The notes under the pieces are model-generated. The model was given only the letters and a program-made list of their open reading frames with translations, was not told the DNA's origin and did no database searches. The position numbers and the translations under genes are program-made. This document shows, in pieces, positions 24,554 through 60,070 of a stretch of DNA of 64,000 nt (the stretch's first letter is position 1; each line of letters starts with the position of its first letter). Origin of the DNA: Schmidtea polychroa (Eukaryota); contig CM097888.1 of assembly GCA_044892525.1 (NCBI GenBank), positions 58,714,001-58,778,000 of the forward strand. Direction: 5' to 3'.

Positions 24554-24790
24554 ATATTTTCCCAACAGGACAGGAATTCAAAAAATTCCAACAATCAAAA
24601 GCAAATTCAAATCCATTCCAAAAAATCTAACTCGAAAACAACTCACAATTCGAAAACATCCAACAAAAACTCTGAGTCGAAATCGATCCAAACTCTGACA
24701 ATCTTCACAATTGTACGCGTCTGTGTGCGCACACCAAAACCTCCAAAAACCAGTACAACGCACACAGACGCGAGCATCGACAATTAATCA
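24554..24790 (-). promoter_or_regulatory. Structured 5' leader of LTR element (PBS-like start, hairpin)
   Basis: Perfect 14-bp stem 24716-24729 / 24759-24772; 12-nt palindrome GTGTGCGCACAC at 24723-24734; homologous to the 59915-60070 leader (ctcgcgtctgtg). Confidence 0.55.
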
Positions 24791-25153
24791 ATTGTCTAGA
24801 TGAATAATTGAAAAGTATGTTTCAATCTTCTCAATAAATTCTTCCAAATCGTCTCCAATTGAATAGATTTTCGGCTATGGGAGAATCCGTAATAATTCCT
24901 GGGTTGAAAGGTGGTTATGTAGAATAAAAATAATTTGATAAATTCCAAAAAACTTTATTTAAGAAATTGTGGTACTATTTATAGTACCCGGTGTGCCAAC
25001 ACCAACACAATCAGCAATAGCTTATTGGGAAATAATAATCAGTGACATAATTTGAGGACCCAGACAATCAAAAATAATAAATCACCATGCAGGCATTACA
25101 TAATATAAGGTAAAGGTTAGGGAAATCAAATATCCTATTATAATTACATCACA
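24788..25153 (-). mobile_element. Second LTR element: LTR (about 25153-24918) and gag N-terminus, truncated
   Basis: Minus strand TGTGATG...TATAAAT...AATAAA...TTCTACA; then PKIYSIGDDLEEFIEKIETYFSII (gag-type N-terminus). Confidence 0.55.
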
Positions 25154-25270
25154 ATAAACAAATATTCTTTGAGTGTTTTTTATAAGTATTACGTCAAACA
25201 TTTAGTTTTTATATTTACTTTTTTTTGTTGTTTTAAGACACTAATATTTTATCTAATATATTGTTTAATA

Positions 25271-25768
25271 CAGGAATACCTCGCATAGTACGGTTTCGAT
25301 CAGTACGGTTTCTCTATAGTACGGTTTTGAAATTTTCAAAATATGATTGTATTATTATTGGAATTTAAGTGAATTGCTTTTGTTGATCTTTTTTAAATTA
25401 AATTGTTGTGTTTATTTAATTTTATTTACTTTTTTTTCATCAGCTATTTTTAATATTTTTAAAATGAAATAAATTCTTTTTTTGATTTAGTGGCAATGAA
25501 TTGGTATTGCCGGCTTATAAATTTCAATAAATATATACTTAAACGTACAACTGTGTTAAATATGCTTGTTTTGCTCTTGAACATCAGAAAAATAAAAATA
25601 TATAACAAAATATTTTTTGTTTACTAGATTATAATCACGATTTTTAAATTTCTTAATAGGGGTACTAAGCCGTAAATTTATTAGCGCCAGAATGCCTCGA
25701 ATAGTCCGGTTTCAAATAGTACGGCTAAATTTCAGAACCGATTAACCGTACTGTTCGAGGTATTCCTG
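25271..25768. mobile_element. Tc1/mariner-pogo-type MITE
   Basis: TIR CAGGAATACCTCG at both ends, TA on both flanks, subterminal TAGTACGGTTT repeats. Confidence 0.88.
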
Positions 25769-26249
25769 TATATCGTTTGTATATATCAACATTTCTAAGA
25801 GGAAGTAGCCGGCCAGTTTTATGTTGCTTTCCTATCTTAAGAATTTCTTGTTATTTTTTAGAAATAATTTTTCTTGTATTTTCCAAAAAAAAATTAATAT
25901 TCATAAGTTTTTCAACATTATGAAAGGCACATTCGATTTCATCATTCAATGAGATGAATAAAAATTGCGACAGAAAATTATTGAATATTAATTTATGGTA
26001 ATTTCAAAATTAACAATGAATATAAATTATAACAAACAATAGGCATTTGATAAAACACTGATCAATTAAAACAAAAAGACTACTTTATCTCTTGATTCAC
26101 AATGGGACCTAACAGTATATGATGTGTATTTAAAATTCCGTTTAAAACTATTTCTACATTATTTCACTTCTAACTTTTTCTCTTATTGAATAAGTCTGGA
26201 ATTCGTTGACAAAAAATATGAATAGAAAAGATTTATTCAAGAATTGTCC

Positions 26250-26720
26250 ATGTGAAATTTTAATTACTTTAAAACTATTCAGACAATTCTGTTTAATGAA
26301 AAATAATTAGATTTTTCTATAAAGGATTTTCTTAGAAATGATCGACTAATTTGGATTGGTAATTAACGGCTTTAATGAATTCGTATCGTTGAATAAATAT
26401 TGGTAACTTTTGGGATTAGGCCAATAATTAAAATTTATAGCAAATGGTATAAAAGCGAAGATGAAAATTTAACCAGAATCAAAAACGTGAAAGAGGCCAG
26501 AAACTATAGAGAATTTAGACAAATTCTAAAGAAGCCATAAACAGTAGAGTAACGAGAAAACTATGGAAAAGTCAGAAATCATAATGAGATTCGATTATAG
26601 ATTTTTGGCAATATACTCGCAACTCTATAAACTAAAATATAGTAATTTGAGAAATTATTATTATCTTTTTAAAAGATTGTTTCAAAGACATTTAGTTAAT
26701 TTTTATCATCATAAATTGAT
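26250..26720 (+). mobile_element. Gypsy reverse-transcriptase relic
   Basis: GIKAKM...KRPETIENL resembles the RT C-terminal GI..DP.K...I..W..P.T...LR motif; heavily decayed. Confidence 0.3.
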
Positions 26721-28227
26721 CATTAAATCTCCAAAATATCTTAAAATATTTATGTTAAATAAAAAAGAGAAAAGTCATTTAATTACATAGAATTTAGCAT
26801 TAAAAATTAATCTTAATTTTAAAATTCAAACAAATTACAAGTAACTGGATTTTGTTTACACCAAAGTGCATAAATTACGTTATTTTATAAAACATAATTA
26901 ATTTATATATAGAAAAAATAAACACAAAAATAAAAAAATTATGGGAATTTACTAGAGAAAAATAGAAAAATAATTCTGATAAGAAAAATTAAATACTAAT
27001 ACACATATACTATACACAACGACGCTTTGATAAATAAGCGGCTCTGAGAGACAAAAATTATGGACATCAATCATTTTTTCCAAATCATACCTTCCAAATA
27101 TGGAATAACTAAAACATGAGATTTCAAATTTTCACCGACATTAAATGAACTGTAATTTTTCATTTTTCATCAAGTGATATTAAAAGGTGATTAATGTTTT
27201 TCTTAACTTTTCTTTTATAAAACCTTTTGAAAATACATTTTTATTCAAAAGAGAAACGAGGTTTTGTATAATTTTTGCTCTTGTTATTTAAGGTTATATT
27301 CAAAAGATTTGAGCAGGGATCTGCTCTTATTTTTCATTTTGACTTATGCGGAACCTAAATACTAACTCTCCGAGACAGTCTTTAACCTATATGTCGTATA
27401 AAATCTGCCACTGGCCTAAAAATATCCTGTTTCGACCCAATATTAATAATATTTCAAATATTCTAGCTTTCAATAAAATATCAACTAATGGTGTTGAAAA
27501 ATATAACAAAACTCAAAAAAAAATTTTTATATCATGAAATAAAAATTCAATAAAATGAAACAGTGTTATTTTTTAAATTTTATCTAAATTTATTTAAAAT
27601 AAATTTAACAATCTCCATTCAAACTTAATAAGATGTTCTATTAAAAAATCAATATCTGTTTTTGAAAATACGAGTAATAAAATTTTATTAATCAGAAAAT
27701 ATTAAACTTAAATGTAACAATTACCCATTTTGTTTTCATACGTATTTTAATTTAATTTAAAATTTGAAATATTAAGAATAATGAAAATTGATCGAATAAT
27801 TATTTTAGCTTATATTTTCGACGAATATTCAAATTCTGTGAAATGAAATTGGTCATTATATTATTTTAGAGCTACTTTCAAGACTATTTTCTTAAATAAA
27901 TAGCTCAACAACACAAAAGAATTTCAAAAATTTGTTAACATTACAGGTTTTAAGTGAAACGATGCTCAAAAGTACTAAATTATTATATAGTTATTTGGGT
28001 CATGATTATTGTAATAACATTTCTTTTGGATATGAAAGGCTATATTAACTATTGTCAAATATCAAGTAATAATTTTTGTATATACTTTATAGAAAATAAT
28101 ACATTAATTATACATTTTTAAATATATTCATTTTATCTTCCAGCAATTATTTTGATTTTACGAACGTAAGATAAATCATGGAATTTATAATTTTTAAAAT
28201 TTTAATATTTTTAAGTTTTAGTGATAT

Positions 28228-28231
<4 letters not shown>

Positions 28232-28266
<35 letters not shown>
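28232..28266. repeat. (TA)n microsatellite
   Basis: Direct reading. Confidence 0.95.
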
Positions 28267-28267
<1 letters not shown>

Positions 28268-29244
28268 CCGATTTTATTATTGGCAATTAGATCATCTATT
28301 GTGCTGCTCTAAGAAGTGTTTGATTTTCAATAACAAATCAATGAAGTCGGTTTCCTTCTGACTTGTGCCTTTTAAATTGAACAAACAATAGCACTTCTAA
28401 TGTATATTTATATTCAGTTTTATATTATAATTCAATCGTTTTCAAATAATAAGAGATTTTTGGTTGGTACATCTTTGTGTTTTAAACATTCGGTGTAATT
28501 TTCTATAATTTAATTTTCATCCTGATATTTATCAATAATATTGCGTGTTGTATGTGCCGGGTATCTAGAATTATGGCTGATCTTAACCTCAATAACACCA
28601 CATGACTTTACTAACTGATCATCGCTTCGCCCATTGTTATCCCTTTTGACGACCATGTTGGAACTCTTAAACGTGGCTGTAAAAATGGGTAAATGAGCTT
28701 TGTTTCCATAATCGAATCCCGTACTCACACACTGAATTTATGATTTAAATCAAAGTTGTTACAGGTCATTTTAATAATGAGTCTAGTAAGTGCTTATTAT
28801 GTAGTCTGTGTGTGTTTTAAAGATCTTGTAAAGCCTAACAAAATCCCCGTTAAAAATAGGTGTGTTTAAACCTAATTATTTCAAATTTAAATTCATAGCA
28901 ATAAGTCATAGTTTTACCCTACATTTGTTAGTTAGGTTTATAAGCTATGTAAATAAATAAATTACTCATTATCTAACTGAATGTTAATAAGTAACTAAAA
29001 TTGTTGCTAACAGATAACTTACAAATATAAATAACAGTTACTATGGCAACCATACAAAAATAATTTAATTTTTGCGTTTTCAATGATGGAATTTTGAGTT
29101 GTGTCGAAATTAGATAAGTTCTATTTTATTTCGTTTACCAACCAATTAACTAATTTTAGTAAAAGTGTTATTATAGTAATTGAATTGTTAAATATTTACA
29201 AATTCATGGCTTGAACTTGAGTTTCTTGGAACTCCTTGAAAAAT

Positions 29245-29790
29245 CTCTTTTTAAGGTCCAGCAGTAATCTGCCATCATTACTGCATCCCAACACCCTTGA
29301 TACCTTGTCCTCATCTCTTTCAAGTCTTGATGGAACCTTTATCCATGTTCGTCAGTCATTGATTCAAGATCCCCAAGAAACCAACTCTAATGAGAGAACA
29401 GGTAGTGCATTTTGATGCTCATGTTGCATCAAAGGTTTCTAAAAGCAGTCAGCATCTTGGTAACAAGTTCTTTATAGTTCCTGGCTTTGTTATTGCCAAG
29501 AAAGTTGTTGAGAACCTGAACAAAAGCCTTCCACGTTTTAATCTCCACTGATTTCATTGAGTTCTCAAAATGTGAATCTCTCAAGAGCTGCCAAATTTGA
29601 GGACCGTCAAAAATCCCAGCTTTCAACTTTTCAATAGTTAAACATGGAAAAGCTTGGCACATGTATGCAAAGCAGTCCCCAGCCTTGTCCAAAGCTCTGG
29701 TGAATTGCTTGATCAAGCTAAGCTTAATATGAAGCGGTGGGAATAAGATCCTATTTCTGTTCACCAGCGGCTTGTTGATGTTCCTTACTG
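29245..29790 (-). mobile_element. DNA transposase C-terminal fragment, Chapaev3-like (CMC group)
   Basis: LHIKLSLIKQF...GIFDGPQI...NNFLGNNKARNY...CNMSIKMHYLFSH...DEHG*RFHQD...RYQG.W...MADYCWTLKRD. A widespread metazoan transposase signature; the superfamily name is from memory. Confidence 0.6.
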
Positions 29791-30059
29791 ATTATTATTA
29801 TTAATCATTTTCTGAGGAAAGCAGACATACTAAAAGAAAAACAACATAATAGATTCGATAAGGATGCTGAGAGATTTCCATAATCCAAATATTATTTTAT
29901 TAATAATAACGGACAAAAATTTGTCTTATCAAAATTAAATTATTAATTACTAAAATTTTATAAATTTATTTGTAATTATCAACAATCTGTTAACGGCCGC
30001 AGGTTAATGGATTCTTAAGTATTATTATTAAATGTTTTTATTACGTTATGTCTTTACTA

Positions 30060-30517: not shown

Positions 30518-31969
30518 TCAGTTTTTAAATATAAAGTTTTTCACAAATGAGCTCGTTCCTTGGGACGAATTTCCGAATTTCTGTTGCGGTACAAACCCTA
30601 AATATGCTGGTTTGGCGTTGGCTCCATCCACACCAAGCTCACTAATAAAATTATCATATTCTCCCTCTAACTTTGCGTGCTGAGGCGGGAGCTGCATCAT
30701 TGGAATTTGGTTACTATTTACCATACAATCTCTAGGCAAATGTCCAGTGCCTCCGCACAAACTACATATTATTGTATTTGTGACAACGGACTGAGCCTCT
30801 CCAAGAATTTTCAATTTGTTTAATCCTTCCGTTTCTCGATATGTCCCATTAAAAATAGCCAATTGCTTCATTTGATTTTTACGTAATTCATTTTGTAGTT
30901 CTGGAAATTCAATTCCATCTTGGATTATCTTTCTTATTTTCTCAGCTGCTTTATCGACACTTTCTCTTGATATCGAAGTAACATAAGCATGAAGAGGTTC
31001 ATCTTCCCCGGGAAGGGGAGCTCCGTCTCCGTTAAACTGTCCAGGTCTTGCACTTCCTTTACCTCGGATTAGAATTTTTGTACCAGTTTCTTTTTCAAGT
31101 TCTTTCTGCGTCATTCCACGTGGTCCTATAATCAATCCCGCAAAGTTAATATCTGGATAGTCTTCCTGTGGGATGAATATCTTTTCTTCTATTCTTGATC
31201 CGATCATTTTGTCAGGGTAGGGAACAAGTTCTGGTCTTAATGCATGAAGCCTGAGAATCAAATTTCGTTTGCGATCATCTAAGCGTTCTCGCGCTCTATA
31301 TTCTTTTGTGTTGACACGTTTACCATCGTGATTATAAATTGGATCGGGCGATGGTTCACGGCACATTGCTTCGATTTCTTCCGCGTAATTCTTTTGTTTT
31401 AATTTGGTTGTGACGCTGTTCAATTGAATTTGGATCGAATAGACTTCTGCATCCTCTGAGTTTAAATACATTGGGACATTAGCTTGACCAGTTCCCCATT
31501 TACTTTGGCGTTTTCTTTTTTTCGGCTGTTCAGAATTGTTGGTCAAGTTTGAATAATTTTCATTGAAATCTTGATTAACTTGACTTTGAAATATATGGTG
31601 GACATTAGAATCTCTATTCGTATCACAATCTGTCATTTCTGAACGTTTATGTTTCGAGTATCCATCCTTAGTTGGACTTAAATTGGATCTTTCATGTCTT
31701 CGGTGCTTCCTACGATCAGAAGATTTATGAGAATTATCTCTTGAATGGTCACGACGTTTATGGTCACGACGTTTATGGTCACGCTGATAGTCACTTTCTA
31801 CCTCTTTTATTTTACGAGAAGATCGATCTCTTCTTGAAGACTTATTTCTTATTTGTTCTCTAGGAGATCTTTCTCTCTTATGGCGGTAATCCTTATCTTT
31901 CTTTCTCTTTGTATCCCTTGATGAATTTCTCTTGTCTTTACGCGAAGGAGAACTTTCTTTTCTATTCAT
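30518..31969 (-). CDS. SF1: Splicing factor 1 / branchpoint-binding protein, 483-aa ORF
   Basis: N-terminal RS/RD-rich region; U2AF-binding KKRKRQSKWG; REPSPDPIYNHDGKRVNTKEYRARERL; KH domain GLIIGPRGMTQKELEKETGTKILIRGKGS; QUA2 NELRKNQMKQLAIFNGT; CCHC CSLCGGTGHLPRDC. Confidence 0.95.
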   Translation of the reverse strand: MNRKESSPSRKDKRNSSRDTKRKKDKDYRHKRERSPREQIRNKSSRRDRSSRKIKEVESDYQRDHKRRDHKRRDHSRDNSHKSSDRRKHRRHERSNLSPTKDGYSKHKRSEMTDCDTNRDSNVHHIFQSQVNQDFNENYSNLTNNSEQPKKRKRQSKWGTGQANVPMYLNSEDAEVYSIQIQLNSVTTKLKQKNYAEEIEAMCREPSPDPIYNHDGKRVNTKEYRARERLDDRKRNLILRLHALRPELVPYPDKMIGSRIEEKIFIPQEDYPDINFAGLIIGPRGMTQKELEKETGTKILIRGKGSARPGQFNGDGAPLPGEDEPLHAYVTSISRESVDKAAEKIRKIIQDGIEFPELQNELRKNQMKQLAIFNGTYRETEGLNKLKILGEAQSVVTNTIICSLCGGTGHLPRDCMVNSNQIPMMQLPPQHAKLEGEYDNFISELGVDGANAKPAYLGFVPQQKFGNSSQGTSSFVKNFIFKN

Positions 31970-32779: not shown

Positions 32780-35700
32780 CTTGCACTGCTAACTTTCCAA
32801 ACTTGGGTTATAACATTATTCGAATCAATCTTGTACGCTTGAATAACTTGAACAGCTTTTATTATTTCTTAATTGAATATCTTCAAATGCGTCGAAGAAT
32901 CTTACTTGGTGGTTGTTGATAATTATATTTTCACTGCAATGAGGCAATCATAATAACCTTTCTACTTCTCTCGATATGTTACTCCAATGAAATTGGATAA
33001 ATATAAATATGCCATGAAACCTTGGGTGTATTTGAATTTTGAAAAAAAACATTTCAACTGAATTTTTGCATAATCGAAATGACTGCACTCACTATTTGAT
33101 AGAGTAATTATTTTTGATTAATCTAACATGACTATAAAGAATTTACGACAAGAATCAAACGAGAAAGGTTTGACTTGCTTTGGAAATGACTTAATTCTTT
33201 TCGAGAATTTTTTTTATTTTATACAATTTATACTGAAAACGATTTAATTTATAGTGTTTTCTCAATAAATTAAAACAAAAAACAAATGAAACTGTTATAA
33301 TAATATTAATGTTATAATAAAAATAGCCTGCATATGCACTTGACCTGTTTATGAACTTACTCTACTACAACTTAATTGTAAACGTCGTTCCAAATACCTT
33401 GAACAGCTGAAATTTTTAATTTCTTTCTTCGGTTCACTGTCCCGTTGATCACTGTAAATATTCTTTCGACTTGGGCATTTTGAACTGATATTGCAAATAA
33501 AAATTCACACATTTTTAAAAATTCCATTTGATATTTGACATTATTTTCTTTAAAATATTCTCTCTACTAGTAATCAGATTTTTAAAATTTTCAACATTAA
33601 GGTTTTCTATAACAAATATTATATAAGATTATAATGAAATATTATATTTTTAATTATAAAATTGATCTTGTATCATTTACAACGATATTTTTGGTTTCAA
33701 GAAATATTAGTGACTTTTCAACTTTATCCCATGTTGCAAGTCTACTTAATTTCTTTCAAAAAAAGTTATTAAATTTGATAATTGATTAGTCCACAATTGT
33801 TTATATTCCAAAGATTTTATAGCAATTCATGTAATTTAAATTGAATTTATTTATTTCACTTAACAAAATAGATTTCACTTTGATTGGTAAAAACATATTT
33901 GTCATATCTATGAATCAATGTTTCTGTTAATGAATTTTTTTTAATTTTTCCAATGAAAAAATTCATTTTTTGGTAATCTTGTATTTTTTTAAACAGGTAT
34001 TGCTGTTTCATTTGACAAAAAATATAAATCGATCATTTTTGTTCCCGGATCCTTGTAAGGAGATGATTCTATTAAAAATTTTTTTAAAGACTTAATGACG
34101 ACTGGAAACATTTTAATTGCACCATAATTTCTTCCGTCGGTTGAAATTGATAATATTTTATATTTGGATAAATAGCATAAATTTAACCAATCAATGGAAA
34201 ATATTCTCCGGCGGAATTTCCGTTCAACATTGTTCTCGAATTGTTAAGTTTTATGCATTTGCTTCGGTAGATTTTTGTTTATGTGTAAAAGCCAATATAA
34301 TACTATAAAATTGACATAAAACCTTGTCTGCATAAAGTTTTGTGTAAAACCTAAACTTAAAATAATTAAAAATTGGCGAAATTAATAAATAGAACAATTT
34401 GAATTTTTATATAAAAAATTGTGTTTATAAAGAAAACATGTTCTTTTTAAGAGTCCTATTGGAAAGATTGTACATGTAAAAACTTGTGATATTCTTAGAT
34501 AAATGTGTTTCTTACTTTATCTGGTATCCAAATCTTTCGATAGTTCTAATAATACTATTTTAGACTTTTTGAATTTCTTGAGAAGCTAGATTTGATTATT
34601 TTTATTTCTTTACTATCTTTTTGCCATTTAACAAACAAATTCTTTGTAATAGTCGCAATTAATTGTTTTCAGTTTTTCAGTTTCCAAATCTTCGCTTCCA
34701 GATTATTTTTTTGACATTGAATGCAAGTTATATAATAACTTCTCAATAATGAATCTGCATTTACGTTAAGTTCACATTTTCTGTATTCAAATTTAATATT
34801 TAGAGTAGTGAAATGTCTCATCAAAGTTTGAAAATGTGTGTTTATGGGTTTCTTTTTTTATCATGAACGTAAACGCTTCATGGTCTGTTCTAAGTATAAA
34901 TAGTTTCCTATAAATTATTAGGTTTATAATCTACTAATAGACGATAAAGCTTGAAGTAGACTATAAAGTGATTTGTACTTAGGAACTCTTTTCTCTATCC
35001 AATATCCTAATTAATGTTTAAACTGGCATCAGTATCCAAAATGGAACTTATTAAAATTTCGATATATTAGAATTGGAGCCATTAGTGTTTCTCTTTTAGT
35101 TCTTCGAACGCTTTCTGGCACTTTTGTAACCATCTTAATTTTTTACTTGGAATACTTGTTAATTCTTCTAAGTGGTTCGATTAACTTTTATAAATGTCTC
35201 ATAATAATTTGTAATTTGTAACTTCTAAATTTATTCAACGCATTGGGGTGTTTCGAAATTCTTAAACGACTCTTCTTTATAAAGTATAAACTTTAAATGG
35301 TTACTTTTCAATTCAACCTTATCTATTTTTATGAGAACTTGGTCTATGTCTCTCATGTCGTCCAAGTATACCATAAAATTTCTCAATAGTATGTTCATCA
35401 GTCGCTGAAAAGTTGCTCATGCCTCGGCTATATCAAAGGATACTAAGTTAAAACAAGAATCCCGGTAAAAAAAGTGCTTGAGTTGTATGGTACATCTGAA
35501 ATTGTCTGAAAAAATTGGTGCATGGTATACAAAAGGTTGGCCACCTCTGACTTATAGTAACCAGTTGCGGTTTTAACTTATTGGATTCTTTCTCCTCGAA
35601 TTATGAACATTTTTTTGTTATTTATGAACAACACGTTTAAGTTTTGAAGCGTTTAGAAGGGAATATCATTAAACAAAATAATTAAATTTTCTAACACCTC

Positions 35701-36492: not shown

Positions 36493-36999
36493 TAACTTAA
36501 TAACTTAATTAATTTTAAAAATGTATATTGAATAATTTTGCATTTTGTATCTTATGTAAATTATATATTAACAAATATAATGTAATTTAAAATAATAGAA
36601 TGTTTATAAAATTAAGTATTTGATGTTTCTTTGCTCAAAATAATGTTGGTGTAAAATAATCCTCATGTTGTCAATTTTAGTGTTAAATTAATGAATACTA
36701 TCGACACTTGGGCCACGCTGTTTGACACGGTGACCATGCTCTCGAGTAACTTTGTGAAATCTCCATATACTTTTGACATTAGAGATGATGTTTTTAAGTT
36801 CATTAAAGAGATCAAGCGCTTTTTCTCGTTGCTGTAAGTAGTATGATGTAAGCCCGTAACACCAAAGGGAAAATATTTTTTTTATTTAAATTAAGCAATA
36901 GATATAAATTAATAGATGTATCACCTACTAATGGGCGATAATCATTTTACGATATAATAATATTACAGTGATGTAATAGATTAGCAGTCTCAATTACAA

Positions 37000-37916: not shown

Positions 37917-38012
37917 ATAATGTCAAAGCTGTATTGTTAAATATTGACAATTAGTTACCACCCGTACCTGTAGGGAATACAATCGCAAGTATCGAGTACC
38001 CGGGTATTTCTA
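37917..38012 (+). repeat. 96-bp exact copy of 48279-48374 (flank, TSD and left end of the Ac-like hAT)
   Basis: Base-by-base identity at offset 10362. Confidence 0.9.
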
Positions 38013-44419: not shown

Positions 44420-44734
44420 AATTTTATTTATTTTAATTCTACTTAATTTTGAATTTTTATTTTTATTAACTGGTGGCAATTTTTTATAAATTATGATAAA
44501 TTTTATTTTCGATATTTTATATTTTATCTATTTTTAATTTATTTCAACGCCAACGTAGATATATTTCATTATTTTAATAATAAAATCGATTATTTGTTTC
44601 ATTTTAGTCAAAACATCATTGAAAATGTATAGTGAAATGATTCTAAATAATTGCATGTTAGGCAAAGAAATTCTCCGAAATCGAATGGCGAGGGCGGTTA
44701 CAAATCCCAACTTGGTACCACCTATGTTAATAAA

Positions 44735-46389
44735 ATAAGCGGTGTGTTTGCGAGAATTTTAGGATAAGCGTTATAAATGCAAAGAAGTCATAATGAAAAT
44801 TGCTAAATATGAAAAATGTACGAACGAACTACCGGTAAGCTTTGGCCTGAAAATACGATTTATCGAATCAATAACGCAAATATAAGTCGATGAATAAGCT
44901 AAACTAAAGATTTATTACGAAACGTGGGATTTGTATTAAATGAGTCTGAGCAGCAGACAGTTATTTTCACCCATAAAATACTATTTGGTCAGCCTATTTG
45001 TAGAAAATGAATGGGAAACGAAAAATCGGATGTGAAAAATTATGGTTCAAACAATCAATAAGCGGTGTGTTTGCGACAATTTTAGGATAAGCGTTATAAA
45101 TGCAAAGAAGTCATAATGAAAATTGCTAAATATGAAAAATGTACGAACGAACTACCGGTAAGCTTTGGCGGGAAAATACGATTTATCGAATCAATAACGC
45201 AAATATAAGTCGATGAACAAGCTAAACTAAAGATTTTACAATGTAATATATTATTAGCTCCGTTATATCGGTTAGTGTCAGATTCTTGGATAGCCTTACC
45301 AAACTATCGTTGATTCAAAAATTCTTTAAAAATTGAAATTAACAAGTTTTGAGTATCTAATAAACTTAAATATTAAATAAGATGGCACAAGTGAGTTTCA
45401 TAGACCTATAGTAAAATTATTAACAATATCCGAATCGACATTTTCTATCAACTCATTAACTTTGGATAAAATATTGTGTCGAGGTTCCCAGAATCTCAAC
45501 TTGGTATCTTATATAAATAAACACGTCAACACTGGTTAGTAAGTTTTATTCTGATTTTACAATTACAAAGTAATTGCCTGATAAAAATATCACAACCTCC
45601 TTTAGTTTTATTTGTTGTAATGTGTATATATGTATTGAATGCCTTGTATTGTTATTTGTCAAATGCTTTTTCCTGAGCTCGATATGCTGTATGCTTTAAT
45701 TTATTCTTTCAAAAGTTGATATCAACTATGAAATTCTTCTTGAGCATTTAATTTTTTGACCGATTTGACTAAACATTCCCTATTCTTATACTCTCATCTT
45801 AAACTTTTGTTGCTTTGATTTTAAGGGATTAAGAAACGATTTCCTATTTGTCAAGTGCAATTGCTATTTTCGGGTCATCGTGGTTTCCAGCATTCTGAGG
45901 TTAGAAATGTAAAGGTCTATTATCTAGACATCATAATAGTTTTATCATATAATTTGTCATAATATTATCATATAATTTGTATTTTATTTATTACCATAAT
46001 TTTCTAATCATTATTGTAATTATTACAACCATTATTACTTTAGCACTTTAAGTGCTTTTTTATATTTACATAAAATCGTTTGCATTTTAGGTGCTTTTTT
46101 TAAATGATTTTTTATGACGCTCTTTTATGTTTATTGACAAAAATTATTATTATTAAAGTTAATGGTTGAGAGATAATTTAAAACTTTAATCGATCCAATT
46201 GCAATTATTTTAAATAACAAACGGTACAGAAATTGGATAGAAATATTACGAAACGTGGGATTTGTATTAAATGAGTCTGAGCAGCAGACAGTTATTTTCA
46301 CCCATAAAATACTATTTGGTCAGCCTATTTGTAGAAAATGAATGGGAAACGAAAAATCGGATGTGAAAAATTATGGTTCAAACAATCAA
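44735..46389. repeat. Segmental near-identical duplications A-B-A ... B
   Basis: A about 44735-44913 repeated at about 45057-45236; B about 44914-45058 repeated at about 46244-46389. Confidence 0.85.
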
Positions 46390-46422
46390 AAGAGAATTAA
46401 TCTGTTTATTTTATATATTTAA

Positions 46423-47530: not shown

Positions 47531-47531
<1 letters not shown>

Positions 47532-48072: not shown

Positions 48073-50812
48073 ACCTGAAGCTGGCTAAAGTTTAGTGAAT
48101 TGCTAATATCAAAATTAAAAGAGAGACTTGTTAAAGAAAGATGTTAGAATATCAATTTTTATCGTAATCGATCACAGAACGTAATTTTATTTTTTCTAAG
48201 AAAAATGAACTCTGTTATTGCTGTAACATTGACGGGTTATTTCAATTTTTTGAACAGGAACATAATTATGCCTCAAATATAATGTCAAAGCTGTATTGTT
48301 AAATATTGACAATTAGTTACCACCCGTACCTGTAGGGAATACAATCGCAAGTATCGAGTACCCGGGTATTTCTAGTAATAAGTAAATTTTCGAGTAACTC
48401 GATACCCGGGTACCTTAAAAAATACCCGATAAACATTATTCACACATTTTATAATTAAAGTTAAAAAAATAAAAAAAATTATCAGCGCAATCTGGATTTA
48501 AATAGGAAAAAACTGTCTTTTGAGTTAAAATTCACAATTGCATATAAGCTGCAATAATTTTTTCTGTGATGTAGTTTGTAGTTTCTACATTTAACAGCTA
48601 ATTGACACCAAAGAAAGTGACATTTGACATAATTTATTATTACACAAAGATTTTTCATCGTACTAATATTGCTTTTTCATCGAGATTTTTAATTTTTATT
48701 GATTTTCCAGATTTTAATCGTTATTTTCTTAATAAATTGTTAATTCTACTAACTATTACTTATACTATATCTATATCTATATCTACAATACATTTTCTAT
48801 TTCTACACGTTAGTTTTTTTTTTAATATTATGATGAACTATAAATTATTTGTTCTTTATACATATACCCATTTTATACATAGAATGCCAAAGAGATCACA
48901 GACTTGGGATTATTTCACAAAAATGTCTGACCAAACTACAGCTAAATGTAATAAATGTGGAAGTTTAATACAAACAAAGGGAGGAAATACCAAAGCAATG
49001 ATTAATCATTTACGCAGTAGGCATGAAATATCAATTAATAAATGCCTAGAACCAGATGCCCCAATTTCGATCGAATCTGGTGATTTCGTGTCAGCTTTTT
49101 GTGCTAAACGCCCAAAACATGATGATGTAAATATTTTAAAATTTATAAAACGAGCATCTAGAAATGAATTATTGGCAAAATGTGCCGCGAAAGATGGATT
49201 TTCTTTTAGAGCGATAACACATTCTGAAGCTATCCGAAGTTTCATCTTATCCAAAAATTATGATATGCCAAAATCTGAAGTCACTATTAAAAATTGTATC
49301 ATGAAGTTCTGCGAGGAAAAACAAGTAGAATTAAAACAAAAATTAATAAAAAAAGGAAGTAATGTTAAACTTAGCATTACTGTCGACGAATGGACAAATA
49401 ATGCTTGCATCCGTTTCATTAATGTTACGCTGCATTCTCCAACAGAGAAACATAACCTTGGATTGACCAAATTGATGGGTCATGCAACGCAACAGAAACA
49501 ATTCGTTTGGTAGAATTAACATTAAATAAATATGGTTTGAATTTAAAAACTGATATTGTTGCATCAACACATGACGGTGCGTCTGTGATGGTGAAATATG
49601 GTGATGAAATAGACGCAATTAGCTAGCTATGTTACAACCACGCTATTCATTTGGCAGTGGTAAGTATATTTTATTCAGTAAAATCTTCTCAGTCAAATAA
49701 CCAAATAGAAGAATTTTCTGAATATGACGATGAAGAAGACAACGAATCTTTGAATGGCACCGATTATTTGTCTAGTGTTGCAAATATGAATTTTGTTGTG
49801 GATTATCAAGAAGAAATATTTGAATTATCAGTAGATATAAGCAATATAGTCAATGAAACAAGAAGAATTTGTAAATTTTTTAAAAAGTCATCAGTAAGAA
49901 ACAGTATTTTGCAAAAACATGTTGTTGAACAGCATGGAAAAAAATTGAAACTATTGTTAGACTGTCGAACACGCTGGAACTCCCTAATAGTTATGATAAA
50001 TCGCTTCATATTATTATCGGGTTCTATATATAAGAAATTGGATGAACTAGGTGCAATGGTTCCATCTGATGACCATATTTCGTTTCTTAAGGAAATAGCT
50101 CAAATATTAGAACCTTTGGGAGAGGCAGTGAGAGAATTAAGTAAAAGAGAAGCCAATTTGTTAATTGCTGAAGGAACTTTGATGTTCGTGTTCAACAAGC
50201 TAAAGAAAATTGGTACACCTTTGGCTATCAGAATGTTAGACGAACTTCTAATTAAAATTAAACACCGTAGAAATACTAGCATAGTCTCTTTATTAATGTT
50301 TCTACATAATGGAAAACATCCCCAGTGAAACGAGTTTTTTTCATATTCCACCAAGCACAATATCAAAATAACTGCAAAACAAATATATGAAAAATTATTT
50401 GTTGAACCGGATCCGGATCCTGAATCACCTGAAGTAATCCTACAAGCTCGAAGTGAAATTTGTGAAGTAGGCGAAGACGACCAAGACTCTTTGAGCAAGA
50501 CATTGATGACATTTCTAGCTTCACCAATTTTAGAATCAACGCAACAACTTGAGAAAGAATTGAAGATAATGGAGGGAAATGGTAAGAGAACACCAAATTT
50601 AGAACAACTTTATAAAGCACTTATTACCATAAAACCAACATCCGTTGATTGTGAAAGAACTTTTTCCATTGCCGGAAATTTTTGCACAAAAATTCGTTCC
50701 AAATTAATGCCGGAAACCTTAAGTAATTTAGTATTTTTAAAATACTATTTCAATGAAACTAAATAAAAAATAACATTATCATTGTCTAATAAAATAACAT
50801 TATCATTTAATG

Positions 50813-53853: not shown

Positions 53854-56800
53854 ATTTAATGTATATTATATAAAAATATGAATTAATAGAGACTTATATT
53901 TATTATAAACATATATTTTTTAAATATCCGAGTAACCCGGGTAACCCGGGTAGGTAAAAATTGAAACTCGAAAAACCCGGGTAGTATAATTCTCGAGTAA
54001 TTGTATTCTCTACGTACCTGTTCATATTCAATGACATGTGGGAAACTTACAAAAAACCTACATAGGAGTCATTACATAATTACATCACGCTCGATTTCCT
54101 TGAAAATGTGATGTGGCCTAGTTGAGCTGAACATTACGTCATTTTATAATGTGCCAGTTCAAAGTACATGCTTCAAATGTATCGTGTTGCAAACAATTTC
54201 GCCATCCTCAATTTCGAAAAATATCACCAAACAGGTTTCTGCTAAATCGTCATGCTTTTGAGCACACTGAATTTGGGATTATTGAATTACCTCCGAAGGA
54301 TCCAATACCAACAGGTCATCATTTTGCCATCTGTCGGTGCTCCTTCTTGTTCAAGATATACACCCGGATGTTACGAATCAACCAAACTCAGACAACCATA
54401 CCAATTTGATTTGTATTGTCCATTAATATCCATTGAGGTATGAATTCTCCAATTGTTATTGCCAAGACAAATTATTACCACATCTGTCGTAGTCAAAGTC
54501 GCAGACACATGCGAAAATTCAGATAAACATTTTTTACTTCGGAACAACGTGGCAATTCCCCGTGAATTCCTAACCTCGAAGAAGCTGTTCATTAAAGTAA
54601 TTTTACTTGATCCACCGTTACGATTTTTAAAAATCCTTAATTTCATTTTATTATTTGTTTGAAGCATTGATTTGTTCCTAGACTGACTGTAAATTTGTAA
54701 TTGGCATTGCATAATGGTAACACTAGGCTGCCCCCATTTCATGAGCAATTTGATGACATCACAATGAATGGGTCCAGGTGACTGTGATCAAGAGTGATGA
54801 GATGGGTGGGTTTCCAAAAATGTCTTCTTATGGATTATCACCTTTCTTTTTACGTGATATTTTTAATTATTTAAACTATCTCTAACGCGCTATACAAATA
54901 CCAGAAAATAAATAATTTATCTCATATTCCTTTTTAAGACCTATTTGAAATAAACAGTACCTATAGATAATTTTATTTAAACTAAGTTTAAAAAACTAAT
55001 GACAATTGGCATTTGCTAAAACTTTCCAAGTGATAATTGATGTCTGGATATCAAATTTCAAAGAATCATTTAAAAATAAAAACAGTTGTATTATAAGAAA
55101 TAATCTTATATTAGACTTTTTAGACTGTCTCGTTTGAAATATTATCGTTTGTAATGTTTTAAACGAAAAACTAATTTACATTCAAAAGATTGATCATTAT
55201 TTTACAAACATTATTATTCGCAGTTTAATAAATCTAGAAATTTATTTAATAAAAAATTATATAAATCTTATAAACAAAAAATAAAAAGAAAAACACGAAC
55301 ATCTCATTCTGATACTACTTCAATAATATTCATATAAATCTCATTGTTATATCCAGGTAAAAAACTGAAATCCGATCGTAATACCGAATGTACAAATGGT
55401 AAAATACTTGACAAGATTCAAATAATGAAATTTGAAATATAGTATTGAAAGTAAAAACAATTGATACAATTAAACAATCTTTTCATTTAATTTGTTTTAT
55501 GAAATTTATTTACTGATTTATTTAAATTATTTAATAATTTTTATGTTTTAATATGGTAATTATGCTAATTATCATTTAATTCAATGACTTATAACATAAT
55601 CATTTTTTTAAGTGAACAATTTTAAAAACACAGTAATTTACAAATCATAAAATGTGAAAATAATATAAGTTGAGTATTATAAATATATCAAGATTACAAA
55701 TTAATCATATATATTTGATGAATTCGTGAATATCTAAAAACATCGATAACTTAACTGATTCATAGTCATATTGTTATGATTAATATTCATAATATTTTGT
55801 TAAATTACTAGTTGTTAGGCATCTAAATATCCTTTTTAATAATTTTTTAATTTAAACGATTGTAAATAATGCTGAATGTGACCGTAAGACAAATGATATA
55901 TAATAATTTTGATGTTTAAATAGGAAAGACTATTTTTACAGTTCTTTTTCAATGAATTCCTTAATATGTACAGCAAAGTTAAAACCATTAACGCAGCCGG
56001 CCAGTAATGCTAGTATATAATAAAAATAACATGCTAAGCTTTTTTTAAGTTAACTTAATTTAAATAAACTAATGACATAAATAAATATAATATTTTGCAG
56101 AGTAATGGAATGTATGTTAAAAAAATCTTTTAAAAAAATATATATAAAAAGATAAATCAGCAGGATTTCTTAGAGTCATATTTGACTTTTTAGAATTGTT
56201 GGGTTTATGATAAATTTCAGTAGTATAAAATTTATATTCGAGTCTTGGTATAATATCAAGTTATTGAAAGACATCATCATAGACTCTTTTTTGGACAATA
56301 CGAAGATACAACTTTACCGCGATTATCGAATTACAATTTCATAATTAGTACTTAATGAAAATGCAATAAAGATGTTTTCTATCGTAGGAATCCCATGACT
56401 TTTTCATGTCTTTAACATCGGAGAAGCGCAAAACTCAAATATATTTGACAAAAATTTAACGAAGCTTATAAATCATCGATCCTATCAATCATCACAGGTG
56501 ATTTCTTTTCTTTAAATGTTTCCTGGAAAGACAATATCTCTTAACTGAATATGTTAATCATTGAAATTGAAATTTCTGTTTTCTACCTTGCGATGATTGA
56601 TGAGATAAACAAAATTTTCACTAACTAATTAATATGTTGCTTTGGATTTGCATTTGTTGGAATTTGTAGTTGTCTAATCCATTTTTTCTATGTTGCCAAC
56701 TCTTTATATTCTATTTAAATTGAATTTAATTTCCAATAATAAACAAATAATAATTTAACTGTCTCTTAATTCTGAATCTTGATTGTAATTCTGAAACCTC

Positions 56801-56894
56801 CTAAACATTGTAAATTGATATTAAAAGAAAACAAGGATAATTTTATTTATTTCAATATATTTTTTATTTAAAAGTTTACGAAAGATTAAACACT

Positions 56895-57045
56895 CAATAG
56901 TCCATCAATTGTCGGAAGGAGCAATGTCTGGTAAATACGGCGGGTGGGGTAAAACATTCCGATGAAGCACCTCCTAGGTTTTTCTGACAACTTTTGCAAC
57001 ATGCGGCCTAGTGTTGTCGTGCAAAAAAATCACTGTCATGTTTTT
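56895..57045 (-). mobile_element. Mariner relic
   Basis: LHDNTRPHVAK...LPHPPYLPDIAPSDN. Confidence 0.8.
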
Positions 57046-57550
57046 GGTATATTGTTTTGTTGGCACAAAAGTTGACATAGTTGACACAAAAACTATGTTG
57101 TTTACACTTCAGTAAAATGACACATACTCATTTTTAAGTGTAAAATGATGATATGTTAACACTAATAGGGTTACCAGATGGTACGATCCTATTCAATACT
57201 AGTTGCGTCATCTTTGCATTCGTAAGTCATTGTAATTTGTAAATGTATCCCATAGTTGAAAAACGTTGGGCAATACTGACTTGTTTTAGCAAAACCATTT
57301 ATTATTTGTTCACTTTTTACCTGCTTTCGTTTGATATTTCATATATTTTCATTATGACTTTAGATCAGAAATAAAATTGTGCAGAATGAGCGTATGAATA
57401 TTGCTTACATAATTTTTAATGTAATCGTTATGTTGAGTGCTCATAATTAAGTGCTAGTAACCAGATCTGAGATCTTAAATTATTAGAAACCAGATCAATT
57501 TTACAAACAATGATTTTAAATCTTATAACATTAAATTTTTGGTGCATTTA

Positions 57551-57930
57551 GTAGGGTAGAATGAGGAGCCGGAAACAAAGGCATATACCCCCCCCCCCCG
57601 GAAGGGGAGGGGGGTTTTTTAATTAAAAAAAATTTTTTTTAAGGTCAACTTAAAGTCATAAAAAATTTTAAGGTCACGATTAGGTCAAATTAAAGGTCAA
57701 AGTCGATTTTAGGCAATTTTAAGGTCTAATTTTAAACAAAGACATTTACGGAACAAAGATATATGACTCATCATTTTATACAAAGACATATGACTCATCA
57801 TTTTATACAAAGACATATGACTCATCAAATTTTTAATTTTCAAAGGTCAGAGCTTCAAGCAAGTGTGTTATTAGAAAGATCTTGTAGATATCTATGCAAA
57901 GGTTTCACCCGGCTCCTTATTCTACCCTAC
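57551..57930. mobile_element. Foldback element related to 36021-36492
   Basis: TIR GTAGGGTAGAAT(G/A)AGGAGCCGG; CATATACCCCCC tract; AAGGTCA repeats; 27-bp tandem atgactcatcattttatacaaagacat; no TSD seen. Confidence 0.7.
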
Positions 57931-59259
57931 TCTACTGTTTTTTTCTCTTTTTAGCCCATTTTCACCGGTCTGATTGGGATTTAAGTGTAACCATGTACAG
58001 GCAAAATTTAATTCTCTACAAAATGACACAATTACAATTTGAGATTGTCGCTTTGTTTGTAATACACACATGTTTTTACGATAAATTTGTATTTTTCCCG
58101 CAGTTAACGTAATTTTCATGGATTACACCAAAACAAACCTTTGTCTAACTCCTTAATCCGACCCTAGGTATAGTACCCATGCTTTTATTGCTAATCCAAA
58201 GGAATAAAAAATACGAGACATTTATTCCAGTTTAAATGATTCATTTTCAAATTTACGAAATCCTTTTTGACATGATTATAAGCAACAAAAGTAAATTCAT
58301 AAAAAGTGCCAATAAAATCGCACAAATCAGCTAATTTGTTGCATATTTTTTGCATAATTTCTTACTAATTTTAAACATTTCTTGAAATAGTCAAAAAATC
58401 AAAATGACATTTAAAATAATGTTTTAATTAAAATATTAAAATTAAATTGATAAAAAAATGACCCCCCTCCTCAATCAAACCGAAGTAAAATTTTTCAATA
58501 AAATAAAGCAACAATTTATTTTAATTGCACCACAGCAATGGAATCAAAAGAATTCAAATATTACTTTCCCCACTTCCTGTTCATCCCAACGTCACAAACT
58601 GTAGAATTTGCGCGCAATTACTAAATAAATTAATTGTCTTAAACGTGATTTTAAATATCCTAGGAAATTTCTGTTAATTTTGTTCCAATACCGCAAATTT
58701 ATTATTCAACTTTTGATTTTGTCATTGGGAAATTTTTCTTTTTTTTTCAAAATAGAACACGATTTATATTTTCCGAATCAGTTCATTAATATTTATGAAT
58801 TGCTGCAATAATCTTGACATTGAATAACTGGAGTTGAATACTACTTACTAAATATATTAACCAAGATTAATAGCTTATTTGTTATGTTATTTTTGCAAAT
58901 GTTGTCATTTCTTCTTTGATTGACTAACTATTCCGGATTTCGAATGTCATTTAATATTTTGGATGAAATTGAATTTCTTGATAAATAATATTTATTTTCA
59001 TTAGGCTCTGATTTGAAGCATTCAAAAAAAGACAAATTCAAACAATAAATAATTAATTTAAACAAAAATAATGATTAATTTAAACAAAAAAGATTATTCA
59101 ATAAAAATAACGCCAATGTTAAATTTCGAATGGATCTTTTCTACATCAATTAAAATTATTATTTTCTCTTTCTTTTAGTATCATATTTGGTTTAACATCA
59201 GAATAAAACAATATAAATCACATAAAAGTTCTGAAAAGCAAATAAAAATATCGACCTTT

Positions 59260-59336
59260 GGAATGGCGAGACTGGATCATATTGGAGAGCCCCCTCACCT
59301 GTGCCATCATTAGTTTTATGGATACATGCGCCCCTG
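59260..59336 (-). mobile_element. Probable hAT terminus (CAGGGGCGCATG) truncating the chimeric element
   Basis: GC-rich end typical of hAT TIRs; partner end not found. Confidence 0.35.
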
Positions 59337-59370
59337 AAGGGAACCACGCTTTACTACGATGATTATTTGT

Positions 59371-59728
59371 CATAATCAAGACGTCTGTTGAAGCTCTTCC
59401 ATGAAAATCGATTCCTCAAATAGCATAAGGTAACACATAACTTTCATAACTTGTCATAGTGCGAGATACAGGATCACTAGAGTTCAGAACGATACCTGAG
59501 GTACGACCTGAAATGTACAAAGAAAGAACTGCTTGAATTTCAACATACATCATTGTTACAATAAATGTCTCCAACATGATTGAACTGGAAGCTCTACTGA
59601 CGAAATTCCCATTTCACTGTGAAGCATATGATGCCTAATCCGTTCATATCATCCAAATTTGTTTCAATGGTGTGTTCAAACTTGTATTTCAAAGTTAAAT
59701 TACCTTTCATAGAATGAACATTATCATC
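59371..59728 (-). pseudogene. ACT: Intronless actin fragment (approx. residues 55-190), decayed, with internal deletion
   Basis: MKGNLTLKYKFEHTIETNLDDM / [21 protein letters not shown] / [69 protein letters not shown] vs actin [28 protein letters not shown]...[31 protein letters not shown]. Confidence 0.92.
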
Positions 59729-59734
59729 AAAATC

Positions 59735-59904
59735 GCCTCCATTTGGACCAGTAACATTTCTTGATTCAAGATCCTTAGCACCTTCAAAAATATCAAAAAT
59801 AACTTCTCCATCGGTTATTAAGTTGCATTTGAAGCAGCAATTGATTTAAAATGCACAAACACCTTTTTATCATCACTTTTATTGTCAACACTAAGTAATC
59901 GGTA
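59735..59904 (-). pseudogene. Y-box/cold-shock-domain fragment, decayed
   Basis: YRLLSVDNKSDDKKVFVHFKSIAASNA / ITDGEVIFDIFEGAKDLESRNVTGPNGG vs YBX GFINRNDTKEDVFVHQTAI...[27 protein letters not shown]. Confidence 0.82.
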
Positions 59905-59914
59905 TCAATTCTTT

Positions 59915-60070
59915 GAGAAATCGAAAATTCCAGAAAAAACCAGACTATAAATAACTACCAAAATTCCAGAAGCAATCAAAGAATTCCAATAACCAAAGCT
60001 AGTCCACTCGCGCCTGCACTCAGACAAGAAGAAGTGTGCACTCACAGACGCGAGTAGTCAGAAATTACCA
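59915..60070 (-). promoter_or_regulatory. PBS-like site and structured 5' leader of LTR element
   Basis: TGGTAATTTCTGAC then ACTCGCGTCTG...CAGGCGCGAGT stem (11 bp, one G-U) enclosing the GTGCAC palindrome; homologous to 24554-24790. Confidence 0.55.

What the first reader, a model, noticed from the sequence alone, without database searches (positions are those of the whole stretch)
24554..60070. Both gene-capture loci share one conserved, structured leader: a candidate recurrent mRNA-capture retroelement family
Seen: 24790-24554 and 60070-59915 (both minus) align at their starts (TGATTAATTGTCGATGCTCGCGTCTGTG vs TGGTAATTTCTGACTACTCGCGTCTGTG). Each folds immediately into a hairpin whose 5' arm begins with CGCGTCTG: a perfect 14-bp stem in one, an 11-bp stem with one G-U in the other, with different loops. 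Each carries a self-complementary GTG..CAC palindrome (GTGTGCGCACAC; GTGCAC), followed by an A-poor tract rich in GGAATT/TTTTGG. In both cases host-mRNA sequence begins directly after this leader, where gag would normally start. Established: leaders 3' of the PBS hold dimerisation and packaging signals, and GUGCAC is a known retroviral kissing-loop palindrome. Inference: the leader is a psi/dimerisation module, and the leader-gag boundary is a hotspot for capture of host mRNAs. Finding two independent captures (three host genes) in 64 kb suggests the genome may hold many such cargo elements. The coordinates span two separate loci.
Basis: partly seen in the sequence, partly recalled or inferred. 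Interest (0 to 1): 0.85.

Follow-up and report, generated by a model that had tools for sequence, protein, structure and literature searches.

The report
Cargo-carrying insertion, not retroviral leader
The shared "leader" is the conserved end of a small mobile insertion that carries pieces of host genes, and one copy sits inside the gag gene of a decayed gypsy-type retrotransposon; this is ordinary transposon nesting and gene-fragment pickup, not a retroviral packaging leader.

Summary
The sequence features are real. A GC-rich 12-mer occurs only at the two loci, each time opening a 14-15 bp stem, and a conserved 22-mer lies further in.

At locus A, gag codons 1-44 of a Ty3/gypsy-type element lie directly upstream of the "leader" (24922-24791). 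Gag resumes at codon 43/45 at 24024. Three uninterrupted relatives show no insert at that point.

"Leader" plus RING fragment plus 59 nt is therefore one 767-bp insertion (24790-24024). It has TG...CA ends, a 13/16 terminal inverted repeat and a 5-bp target duplication.

In this gypsy family the LTR ends ...ACA and the primer-binding site overlaps the gag start codon, so the family has no leader at all.

Locus B shares the 5' module and carries cold-shock-domain and actin fragments. No 3' end, LTR, PBS or gag could be shown there.

Best reading: the conserved end of an integrase-type, non-autonomous cargo element, either a Pack-like transposon or a solo LTR. There is no covariation, no third copy in the window and no usable outside copy. 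This is a known kind of thing and of modest interest.

The parts
24024..24790 (-). Insertion A: whole 767-bp cargo element (5' module + RING fragment + 3' module), nested in gag
   Evidence: Gag homology lies on both sides. Relatives L122, L121 and L123 are uninterrupted at this point. A scan of 12 kb ranks this 3' end first, with 13/16 TIR plus 5/5 TSD.
24775..24790 (-). 5' terminal inverted repeat of insertion A (starts TG)
   Evidence: 13/16 match to the reverse complement of 24024-24039. P is about 2.5e-5 per random window 16-mer. The repeat finder pair I3 sees it too.
24024..24039 (-). 3' terminal inverted repeat of insertion A (ends CA)
24791..24795 (-). Target-site duplication ACAAT, upstream copy (part of gag codons 43-44)
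   Evidence: The same five bases recur at 24019-24023. Relatives carry these codons once. A longer duplication was rejected.
24019..24023 (-). Target-site duplication ACAAT, downstream copy
24554..24790 (-).
   Evidence: The rare motif ACGCG/CGCGT occurs 14 times in the window, 4 of them in this insertion, including one in the 3' module.
24083..24553 (-). Cargo A: internal fragment of a RING-type E3 ligase gene (residues about 41-172 of P0001), with a 54-nt unit repeated 2.2 times at its start
   Evidence: 74% identity over 146 aa to P0001, which has zinc-ribbon and RING Pfam domains. Tandem repeat.
24024..24082 (-). 3' module of insertion A (59 nt, non-coding, holds one ACGCG motif and the 3' TIR)
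   Evidence: RING homology ends at about 24083. Motif count.
23020..24922 (-). Host element: gag of a decayed Ty3/gypsy-type retrotransposon. It is broken by one nested insertion, three frameshifts and five in-frame stops, and the start codon is not recognisable. No pol follows.
   Evidence: tblastn with P0002-P0032; profile hits; zf-CCHC. Relatives carry PR-RT-RNaseH-IN.
24918..25100 (-). 5' LTR of the host gypsy element (approximate start; ends ...ACA just before the decayed PBS/gag start)
   Evidence: Aligns with the LTR of L122. The LTR|PBS junction in relatives reads ACA|TGGCGAC(A/C)AC.
59976..60070 (-). Locus B 5' module: 16-nt terminus starting TG (60055-60070), 12-mer (60043-60054), hairpin (about 60006-60055), 22-mer (59976-59997). 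A TATA-like run lies just inside at 59946-59953.
59735..59818 (-). Cargo B1: fragment of a cold-shock-domain (Y-box) gene
   Evidence: PDB match to Y-box protein cold-shock domains, residues about 54-82, E = 0.006.
59419..59731 (-). Cargo B2: actin fragment (about residues 54-169), joined in frame to B1
   Evidence: PDB actin matches. Pfam Actin, profile positions 115-169, E = 5e-7. No support beyond 59419.

Best explanation
The shared 'leader' is the conserved cis-acting end of a small non-autonomous mobile element that carries host-gene fragments as internal cargo.

Shown:
- Copy A is a 767-bp unit with TG...CA termini, a 16-nt imperfect terminal inverted repeat and a 5-bp target duplication.
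- It sits inside the gag ORF of a decayed gypsy-type retrotransposon.

Inferred:
- An integrase-like DDE enzyme supplied in trans, making 5-bp staggered cuts, inserted the unit.
- The terminal repeat, the CGCG-motif inverted repeat (the 'hairpin') and the short GGAATT-type repeats are protein-binding sites on DNA. They are not an RNA packaging or dimerisation signal.
- Host fragments (RING in A; cold-shock domain plus actin in B) replaced the interior by template switching during repair or copying, as in Pack-type elements.
- Copy B is a second, older or truncated member with the same 5' module.

I weight the Pack-like TIR-element form slightly above the solo-LTR form of the same integrase-type reading.
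For: - Gag residues 1-44 map to 24922-24791 and residues 43/45-366 to 24024-23020 (profile).
- Relatives L122, L121 and L123 are continuous across that point.
- The inverted repeat matches 13/16, P about 2.5e-5; the duplication matches 5/5; this is the top candidate in a 12-kb scan.
- A 5-bp duplication with TG...CA ends fits integrase-type enzymes: 3-6 bp for LTR elements and 4-5 bp for Ginger2 (PMC10045372; PMC2836005).
- The cargo is an internal CDS fragment of a host RING gene, at 74% identity.
- B carries two fused gene fragments.
- The 12-mer sits at the same 16-nt offset from the TG terminus in both copies.
- The rare ACGCG motif occurs in both ends of A, facing inward.
- Short subterminal direct repeats are present.
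- Animal Pack-TIR elements and gene-fragment capture by transposons are documented (PMC8277862, PMC2774510).
Against: - There are only two copies, and none elsewhere in the window.
- B has no demonstrable 3' end or duplication; its best candidate is at chance level.
- The 16-nt termini of A and B match only 8/16.
- No known cut-and-paste superfamily combines a 5-bp duplication with such short inverted repeats. Ginger elements have repeats of 40 bp or more and TGTNR ends (PMC2836005).
- No autonomous partner was seen.
- The same termini and duplication fit a solo LTR equally well.
- Whether the cargo was taken from DNA or RNA is unknown.
Confidence: 0.45

Rival explanations
1. Solo LTRs. Insertion A, and locus B as a truncated copy, are solitary LTRs of another LTR-retrotransposon family whose U3 region took up host-gene fragments. 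Read on the + strand, the module would be TATA box, then a start-site region (the 22-mer), then R/U5 with a terminal hairpin, then the CA end.
For: - TG...CA ends, a 5-bp duplication, a short imperfect inverted repeat, a 767-bp length and nesting inside another LTR element are all typical (PMC10045372).
- On the + strand a TATA-like run lies 27 nt (A: 24553-24560) and 32 nt (B: 59946-59953) before the conserved 22-mer. This is read directly.
Against: - There is no second copy of either sequence, no internal region, and no PBS or PPT beside B.
- A and B share only about 90 nt, and both 'U3' regions would consist of different host CDS fragments.
- In maize no LTR element held fragments of more than one gene (PMC2774510), whereas B holds two.
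- TATA-like runs are common in 28% GC DNA and read on either strand.
Confidence: 0.3
2. The module is the PBS-proximal leader (packaging/dimerisation signals) of an LTR retroelement, and host mRNAs are captured at the leader-gag boundary.
For: - The stable hairpins fold better than shuffles.
- All one-sided stem changes are G-U in the sense strand.
- The cargo is in the sense orientation in both loci.
- Locus A does lie in an LTR retroelement.
Against: - At A the module is flanked by gag on both sides.
- The family's LTR|PBS junction overlaps the gag start codon about 130 nt upstream, and relatives have no leader.
- A starts TGA, not TGG.
- B's upstream flank does not end in CA and shows no LTR or gag similarity.
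- There are zero compensatory pairs.
Confidence: 0.05
3. No family. Insertion A is a one-off and its resemblance to B is coincidental, or a short shared motif of other origin.
For: - Overall alignment of the loci is not significant.
- The termini match only 8/16.
- B lacks a second end.
Against: - A GC-rich 12-mer is unique to the two sites in a 28% GC window.
- It sits at an identical offset from a TG terminus whose position at A is fixed independently by the gag break.
- In both it is the 5' arm of a long stem.
- In both it is followed, collinearly, by a 19/22 match (p about 0.01) and then by host-gene fragments.
Confidence: 0.12
4. Reverse-transcriptase template-switch chimera: a small structured RNA joined to mRNA pieces and inserted by a LINE or inside a virus-like particle. 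It would have no mobility of its own.
For: - The fragments are internal CDS pieces joined at arbitrary points.
- A 54-nt slippage-like tandem repeat lies at the cargo edge.
- The cold-shock and actin fragments are fused in frame.
Against: - There is no poly(A) tail or long duplication; instead there is a terminal inverted repeat and a 5-bp duplication.
- The module matches no Rfam family.
Confidence: 0.05

Closest known systems
Pack-TIR / Pack-MULE elements (non-autonomous TIR transposons carrying host gene fragments; PMC8277862)
   Same: Conserved ends with inverted repeats and a target duplication. The interior is replaced by fragments of one or several host genes, and the fragments are internal CDS pieces.
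   Different: The 5-bp duplication and TG...CA ends point to an integrase-type enzyme rather than Mutator, hAT or others. The inverted repeat is only 16 nt. Only one complete copy was seen.
LTR retrotransposons with captured gene fragments, and solo LTRs nested in other elements (PMC2774510)
   Same: TG...CA ends, 5-bp duplication, nesting in a gypsy element, host fragments inside a retroelement-type unit.
   Different: No paired LTR, PBS, PPT or internal region. Two unrelated cargo sets sit behind one short shared module. B holds fragments of two genes.
Ginger2/TDD DNA transposons (gypsy-integrase-related cut-and-paste elements; PMC2836005)
   Same: Integrase-like signature: ends starting TG and a 4-5 bp duplication.
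   Different: Ginger inverted repeats are about 40-270 bp and the ends follow TGTNR. Here the repeat is 16 nt and the ends read TGATT/TGTTT. No transposase is present.
Retroviral/LTR-element 5' leader with packaging and dimerisation hairpins
   Same: A stable stem-loop and palindromic runs in a non-coding stretch of a retroelement locus.
   Different: The position is wrong: it lies inside gag, not between PBS and gag. This gypsy family has no leader. There is no covariation.

Membership tests
LTR-retroelement 5' leader (PBS + packaging/dimerisation region) | Begins directly after the 5' LTR end (...CA) with a primer-binding site | tested here: not met
   At A it is preceded by gag codons 1-44. 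The family junction ACA|TGGCGAC.. lies about 130 nt upstream. At B the flank ends ...TTAG and has no LTR similarity.
LTR-retroelement 5' leader (PBS + packaging/dimerisation region) | PBS complementary to a host tRNA 3' end | not testable with these tools
   There are no tRNA genes in the window and no genome of the organism is available.
LTR-retroelement 5' leader (PBS + packaging/dimerisation region) | Followed by the gag start | tested here: not met
   At A the gag start is upstream at 24922. At B no gag was found.
LTR-retroelement 5' leader (PBS + packaging/dimerisation region) | RNA structure supported by compensatory changes | tested here: inconclusive
   With two sequences there are 0 pairs changed on both sides, 7 invariant pairs and 5 one-sided G-U changes.
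LTR-retroelement 5' leader (PBS + packaging/dimerisation region) | Loop palindrome acting as a dimerisation site | not tested
   The letters the finding quotes for retroviruses come from memory and were not used. Function cannot be read from sequence.
Integrase-type insertion (LTR / solo LTR) | TG...CA termini with a short inverted repeat | tested here: met
Integrase-type insertion (LTR / solo LTR) | Target duplication of 4-6 bp | tested here: met
   ACAAT on both sides, with the empty site seen in relatives.
Integrase-type insertion (LTR / solo LTR) | Homologous paired LTRs on full-length elements | tested here: not met
   No direct repeat of either locus occurs in the window.
Pack-type TIR transposon | Inverted repeats + duplication enclosing host-gene fragments | tested here: met
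   Met at A. B has the 5' end and cargo only.
Pack-type TIR transposon | Several copies with the same ends, and an autonomous partner | tested here: inconclusive
   Two copies share the 5' module. There is no third copy and no partner seen.
Ginger1/Ginger2 | Inverted repeats of about 40-270 bp and TGTNR ends | tested here: not met
   The repeat is 16 nt and the ends read TGATT/TGTTT (PMC2836005).
Helitron | No inverted repeat, no duplication, 3' hairpin close to the end | tested here: not met
   An inverted repeat and a duplication are present. The hairpin loops are 20-29 nt.
LINE-mediated chimeric retrocopy | Poly(A) end, long duplication, known small RNA as the 5' part | tested here: not met
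   No Rfam match. A long duplication was rejected. No A-tail is seen.
Ty3/gypsy retrotransposon (the host element at A) | Gag with CCHC knuckles; relatives with PR-RT-RNaseH-IN | tested here: met
   Pol is absent from the window copy.

The most novel reading that the evidence does not exclude
The two loci are members of an undescribed animal family of integrase-mobilised 'Pack' elements (TG...CA ends, 5-bp duplication). These would repeatedly pick up host coding fragments beside a fixed hairpin and promoter-like module, so that cargo is transcribed from the element. They may prefer to insert into gypsy gag sequences.
Probability: 0.15. Interest if true: 0.6.

Novelty: new member of a known kind. 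Interest (0 to 1): 0.33.

Why it matters
It corrects an attractive but wrong reading, in which a retroviral-style leader acts as a hotspot for mRNA capture. The result shows how nested insertions can mimic 'LTR-PBS-leader-cargo' anatomy.

If the family proves multi-copy, it would add an integrase-type lineage to the few gene-fragment-carrying transposons known in animals. Such elements can create chimeric transcripts and new genes.

The host gypsy family, whose primer-binding site overlaps the gag start codon, is a useful annotation landmark.

Tried and rejected
- **LTR pairs, inverted repeats or shared 3' regions around both loci:** self-BLAST, short-word BLAST and Smith-Waterman with shuffles found none, apart from A's own terminal repeat.
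- **Known RNA families:** no Rfam match at gathering or E-value thresholds. No tRNAs.
- **Outside copies of the hairpin:** a metagenome scan gave at least 120 hits, all in contigs of at least 38% GC (median 64%), taken as prokaryotic, so chance matches.
- **Third copy in the window:** a covariance model of the 5' module found none.
- **B's 3' end:**
  - The best candidate (55031) is at chance level.
  - No CTTAG site follows a matching end.
  - The sequence there gives no support.
- **B's upstream flank as gag:** a tblastn hint (E = 0.11) was not upheld by the family profile or by nucleotide alignment.
- **B's upstream flank as an LTR:** the TATA-to-TGG spacing resembles the family LTR, but no alignment was significant.
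- **A long target duplication at A:** rejected.
- **Extending the cold-shock-domain homology into the 'leader' of B:** no tool support.
- **Actin beyond 59419:** no support.
- **Chimeric gag proteins (P450, coiled-coil, kinase fusions):**
  - They join gag at different residues, about 46, 50, 30 and 78.
  - They look like merged gene models.
  - No DNA is on record for the two that were looked up, P0001 and P0002.
- **Other copies of the cold-shock/actin chimera:** none.
- **Helitron, piggyBac, hAT and Ginger readings of the termini:** rejected on termini and duplication.
Full report
**The window.** It is AT-rich DNA (about 28% GC) from a eukaryote.
- It holds hAT-type transposase fragments, a carboxylesterase ORF, an intron-less SF1-like ORF, a mariner fragment and an 18S rRNA fragment.
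- No genome of the organism is searchable with the tools at hand. An exact look-up of a window ORF found nothing.

**Check of the observation.**
- The 12-mer CTCGCGTCTGTG occurs exactly twice in the window, at 24763-24774 and 60043-60054, both on the minus strand. With up to one mismatch, 0.03 matches are expected.
- At A it opens a perfect 14-bp stem.
- At B it opens an 11-bp stem with one G-U, which the folding program extends to about 15 pairs with more G-U.
- Both regions fold better than shuffles (z = -3.8 and -3.0).
- Further in, a 22-mer is shared 19/22 (24578-24599 and 59976-59997).
- Elsewhere the two loci do not align significantly.
- I judge the homology real but short. The argument is the 12-mer, its identical offset from a TG terminus, its role as a stem arm, and the collinear 22-mer.

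**What follows the module.**
- *Locus A.* The open frame 24020-24577 is 74% identical over 146 residues to P0001. P0001 is a 220-aa protein with an N-terminal zinc ribbon and a RING finger.
  - Only residues about 41-172 are present, so this is an internal CDS fragment.
  - It starts with a 54-nt unit repeated 2.2 times.
- *Locus B.* One frame runs from a cold-shock-domain fragment (Y-box proteins, E = 0.006) straight into actin from about residue 54. The next piece matches actin profile positions 115-169.

**The turning point.** The piece after the RING fragment (23719-24051) found a family of gag proteins of about 360-390 aa with CCHC knuckles.
- Contigs carrying three of them (L121, L122, L123) show the gag ORF preceded by a pol C-terminal ORF and followed by a pol N-terminal ORF. 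In L121 and L122 these carry RNaseH-integrase and protease-RT domains, so this is a compact Ty3/gypsy-type element.
- tblastn of these proteins against the window placed gag residues 1-44/46 at 24922-24791. That is immediately upstream of the 'leader'. Residues 43/45-366 map to 24024-23020 (profile search, built only for searching).
- The relatives are continuous across this point.
- 'Leader' + RING fragment + 59 nt is therefore a single 767-bp insertion inside gag.
- Its ends are TG...CA.
- Its first 16 nt match the reverse complement of its last 16 nt at 13 positions (P about 2.5e-5 per random 16-mer). The repeat finder also reports the pair.
- The five bases ACAAT, part of gag codons 43-44, flank it on both sides.
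- An unbiased scan of 12 kb ranks exactly this end first.
- A longer duplication is not supported.

**The true LTR and PBS of the host family.**
- In L121, L122 and L123 a purine run precedes TGTGA..., which marks the LTR start.
- The LTR ends ...ACA (...ATA in L121).
- The next bases, TGGCGAC(A/C)AC, are conserved at nucleotide level between relatives. They overlap the gag start codon, giving the conserved N-terminus MATT.
- I infer that this is the primer-binding site and that the family has no leader.
- The window copy aligns with this LTR up to about 24918.
- The window gag is decayed: one nested insertion, three frameshifts, five in-frame stops and no recognisable start codon. No pol follows.

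**Locus B.**
- By analogy its element starts at 60070. The 12-mer sits 16 nt from the TG in both copies.
- I could not find its other end. The best candidate (55031; 11/16 plus 4/5) is what chance gives in 12 kb. No exact copy of the flank CTTAG follows a suitable end.
- The upstream flank is not detectably gag or an LTR, and it does not end in CA.
- B is either truncated or rearranged.

**What it is.** TG...CA ends with a 5-bp duplication are the signature of retroviral-type integrases: 3-6 bp for LTR elements and 4-5 bp for Ginger2 (PMC10045372, PMC2836005). Two forms fit.
- *(a) A non-autonomous, TIR-bounded cargo element of the Pack type (PMC8277862).* In its favour:
  - The rare ACGCG motif occurs 14 times in 64 kb and 4 times in insertion A, inward-facing near both ends.
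  - Short subterminal direct repeats are present.
  - Both copies carry cargo.
  - B carries fragments of two genes.
- *(b) A solo LTR with host fragments in U3.* In its favour:
  - Its size and its nesting are typical.
  - On the + strand, a TATA-like run lies 27 and 32 nt before the conserved 22-mer.
- I weight (a) slightly above (b).
- Ginger membership fails on repeat length and end pattern.
- Helitron, piggyBac and hAT readings fail on termini and duplication.
- A LINE-type chimera fails on the absence of an A-tail and the absence of any Rfam match.

**Structure and function of the stem.**
- With two sequences there is no compensatory change. Seven pairs are invariant and five vary on one side, all as G-U in the minus sense.
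- This is a weak hint of a single-strand role, not evidence.
- I did not use the palindrome that the finding attributes to retroviruses.

**Recurrence.**
- No third copy lies in the window.
- A metagenome scan gave only chance hits in GC-rich, apparently prokaryotic contigs.
- Several database proteins fuse foreign N-terminal parts to this gag: P450, a coiled coil and a Vps15-like kinase. They join at different gag residues, look like merged gene models, and no DNA is on record for the two that were looked up, P0001 and P0002.
- They are not good evidence for capture.

- I used them as leads.
- I also reasoned about where some breaks in gag lie.
- The identifications rest on tool hits. Only counts of breaks are reported.
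Profiles were used for searching only.

Noticed in passing
L121:1660-1860, L122:3505-3780, L123:590-1000; window 24905-25100(-): In this gypsy family the LTR ends ...ACA and the next bases TGGCGAC(A/C)AC overlap the gag start codon (conserved N-terminus MATT). The presumed primer-binding site therefore lies in the coding sequence and there is no leader. LTRs are only about 180-390 bp and whole elements about 4.5-5.5 kb.
   Followed up: partly
window 21029-21067 (-): A 39-nt second copy (33/39) of the LTR-end/PBS/first-gag-codons segment of locus A lies 3.9 kb downstream on the same strand (0 of 300 shuffles reach the score). Neither the rest of the LTR nor gag follows.
   Followed up: partly
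window 24431-24549: A 54-nt unit of the RING cargo is tandemly repeated 2.2 times exactly at the cargo/module boundary. This is slippage-like.
   Followed up: no
window 63309-63766 (+): An isolated, diverged fragment of eukaryotic 18S rRNA (model positions 1158-1661, 169 bits) lies outside any rDNA unit.
   Followed up: no
window 34477-35455 (-), 36691-36843 (+), 46165-46323 (+): Further fragments of gypsy-type RT/RNaseH, a gag N-terminus of a more distant family, and integrase.
   Followed up: no
window 37917-38012 and 48279-48374: Two 96-nt stretches are 100% identical and lie 10.4 kb apart, next to hAT-like ORFs. Repeats of 146-180 nt at 98-100% identity lie at 44734-46389.
   Followed up: no
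window 60816-61400 (+) and about 56900-57040 (-): Two mariner-type transposase fragments flank locus B. One may interrupt the B element.
   Followed up: no
window 30518-31969 (-) and 19132-20913 (+): Long intron-less ORFs for an SF1-like splicing factor (KH domain plus one zinc knuckle) and a carboxylesterase with an N-terminal membrane anchor. They may be retrogenes or reflect an intron-poor genome.
   Followed up: no
proteins P0002, P0008, P0017, P0034: Database proteins join a P450, coiled-coil sequences or a Vps15-like kinase to the N-terminally truncated gag of this family. They are probably merged gene models in a related, transposon-rich genome.
   Followed up: partly
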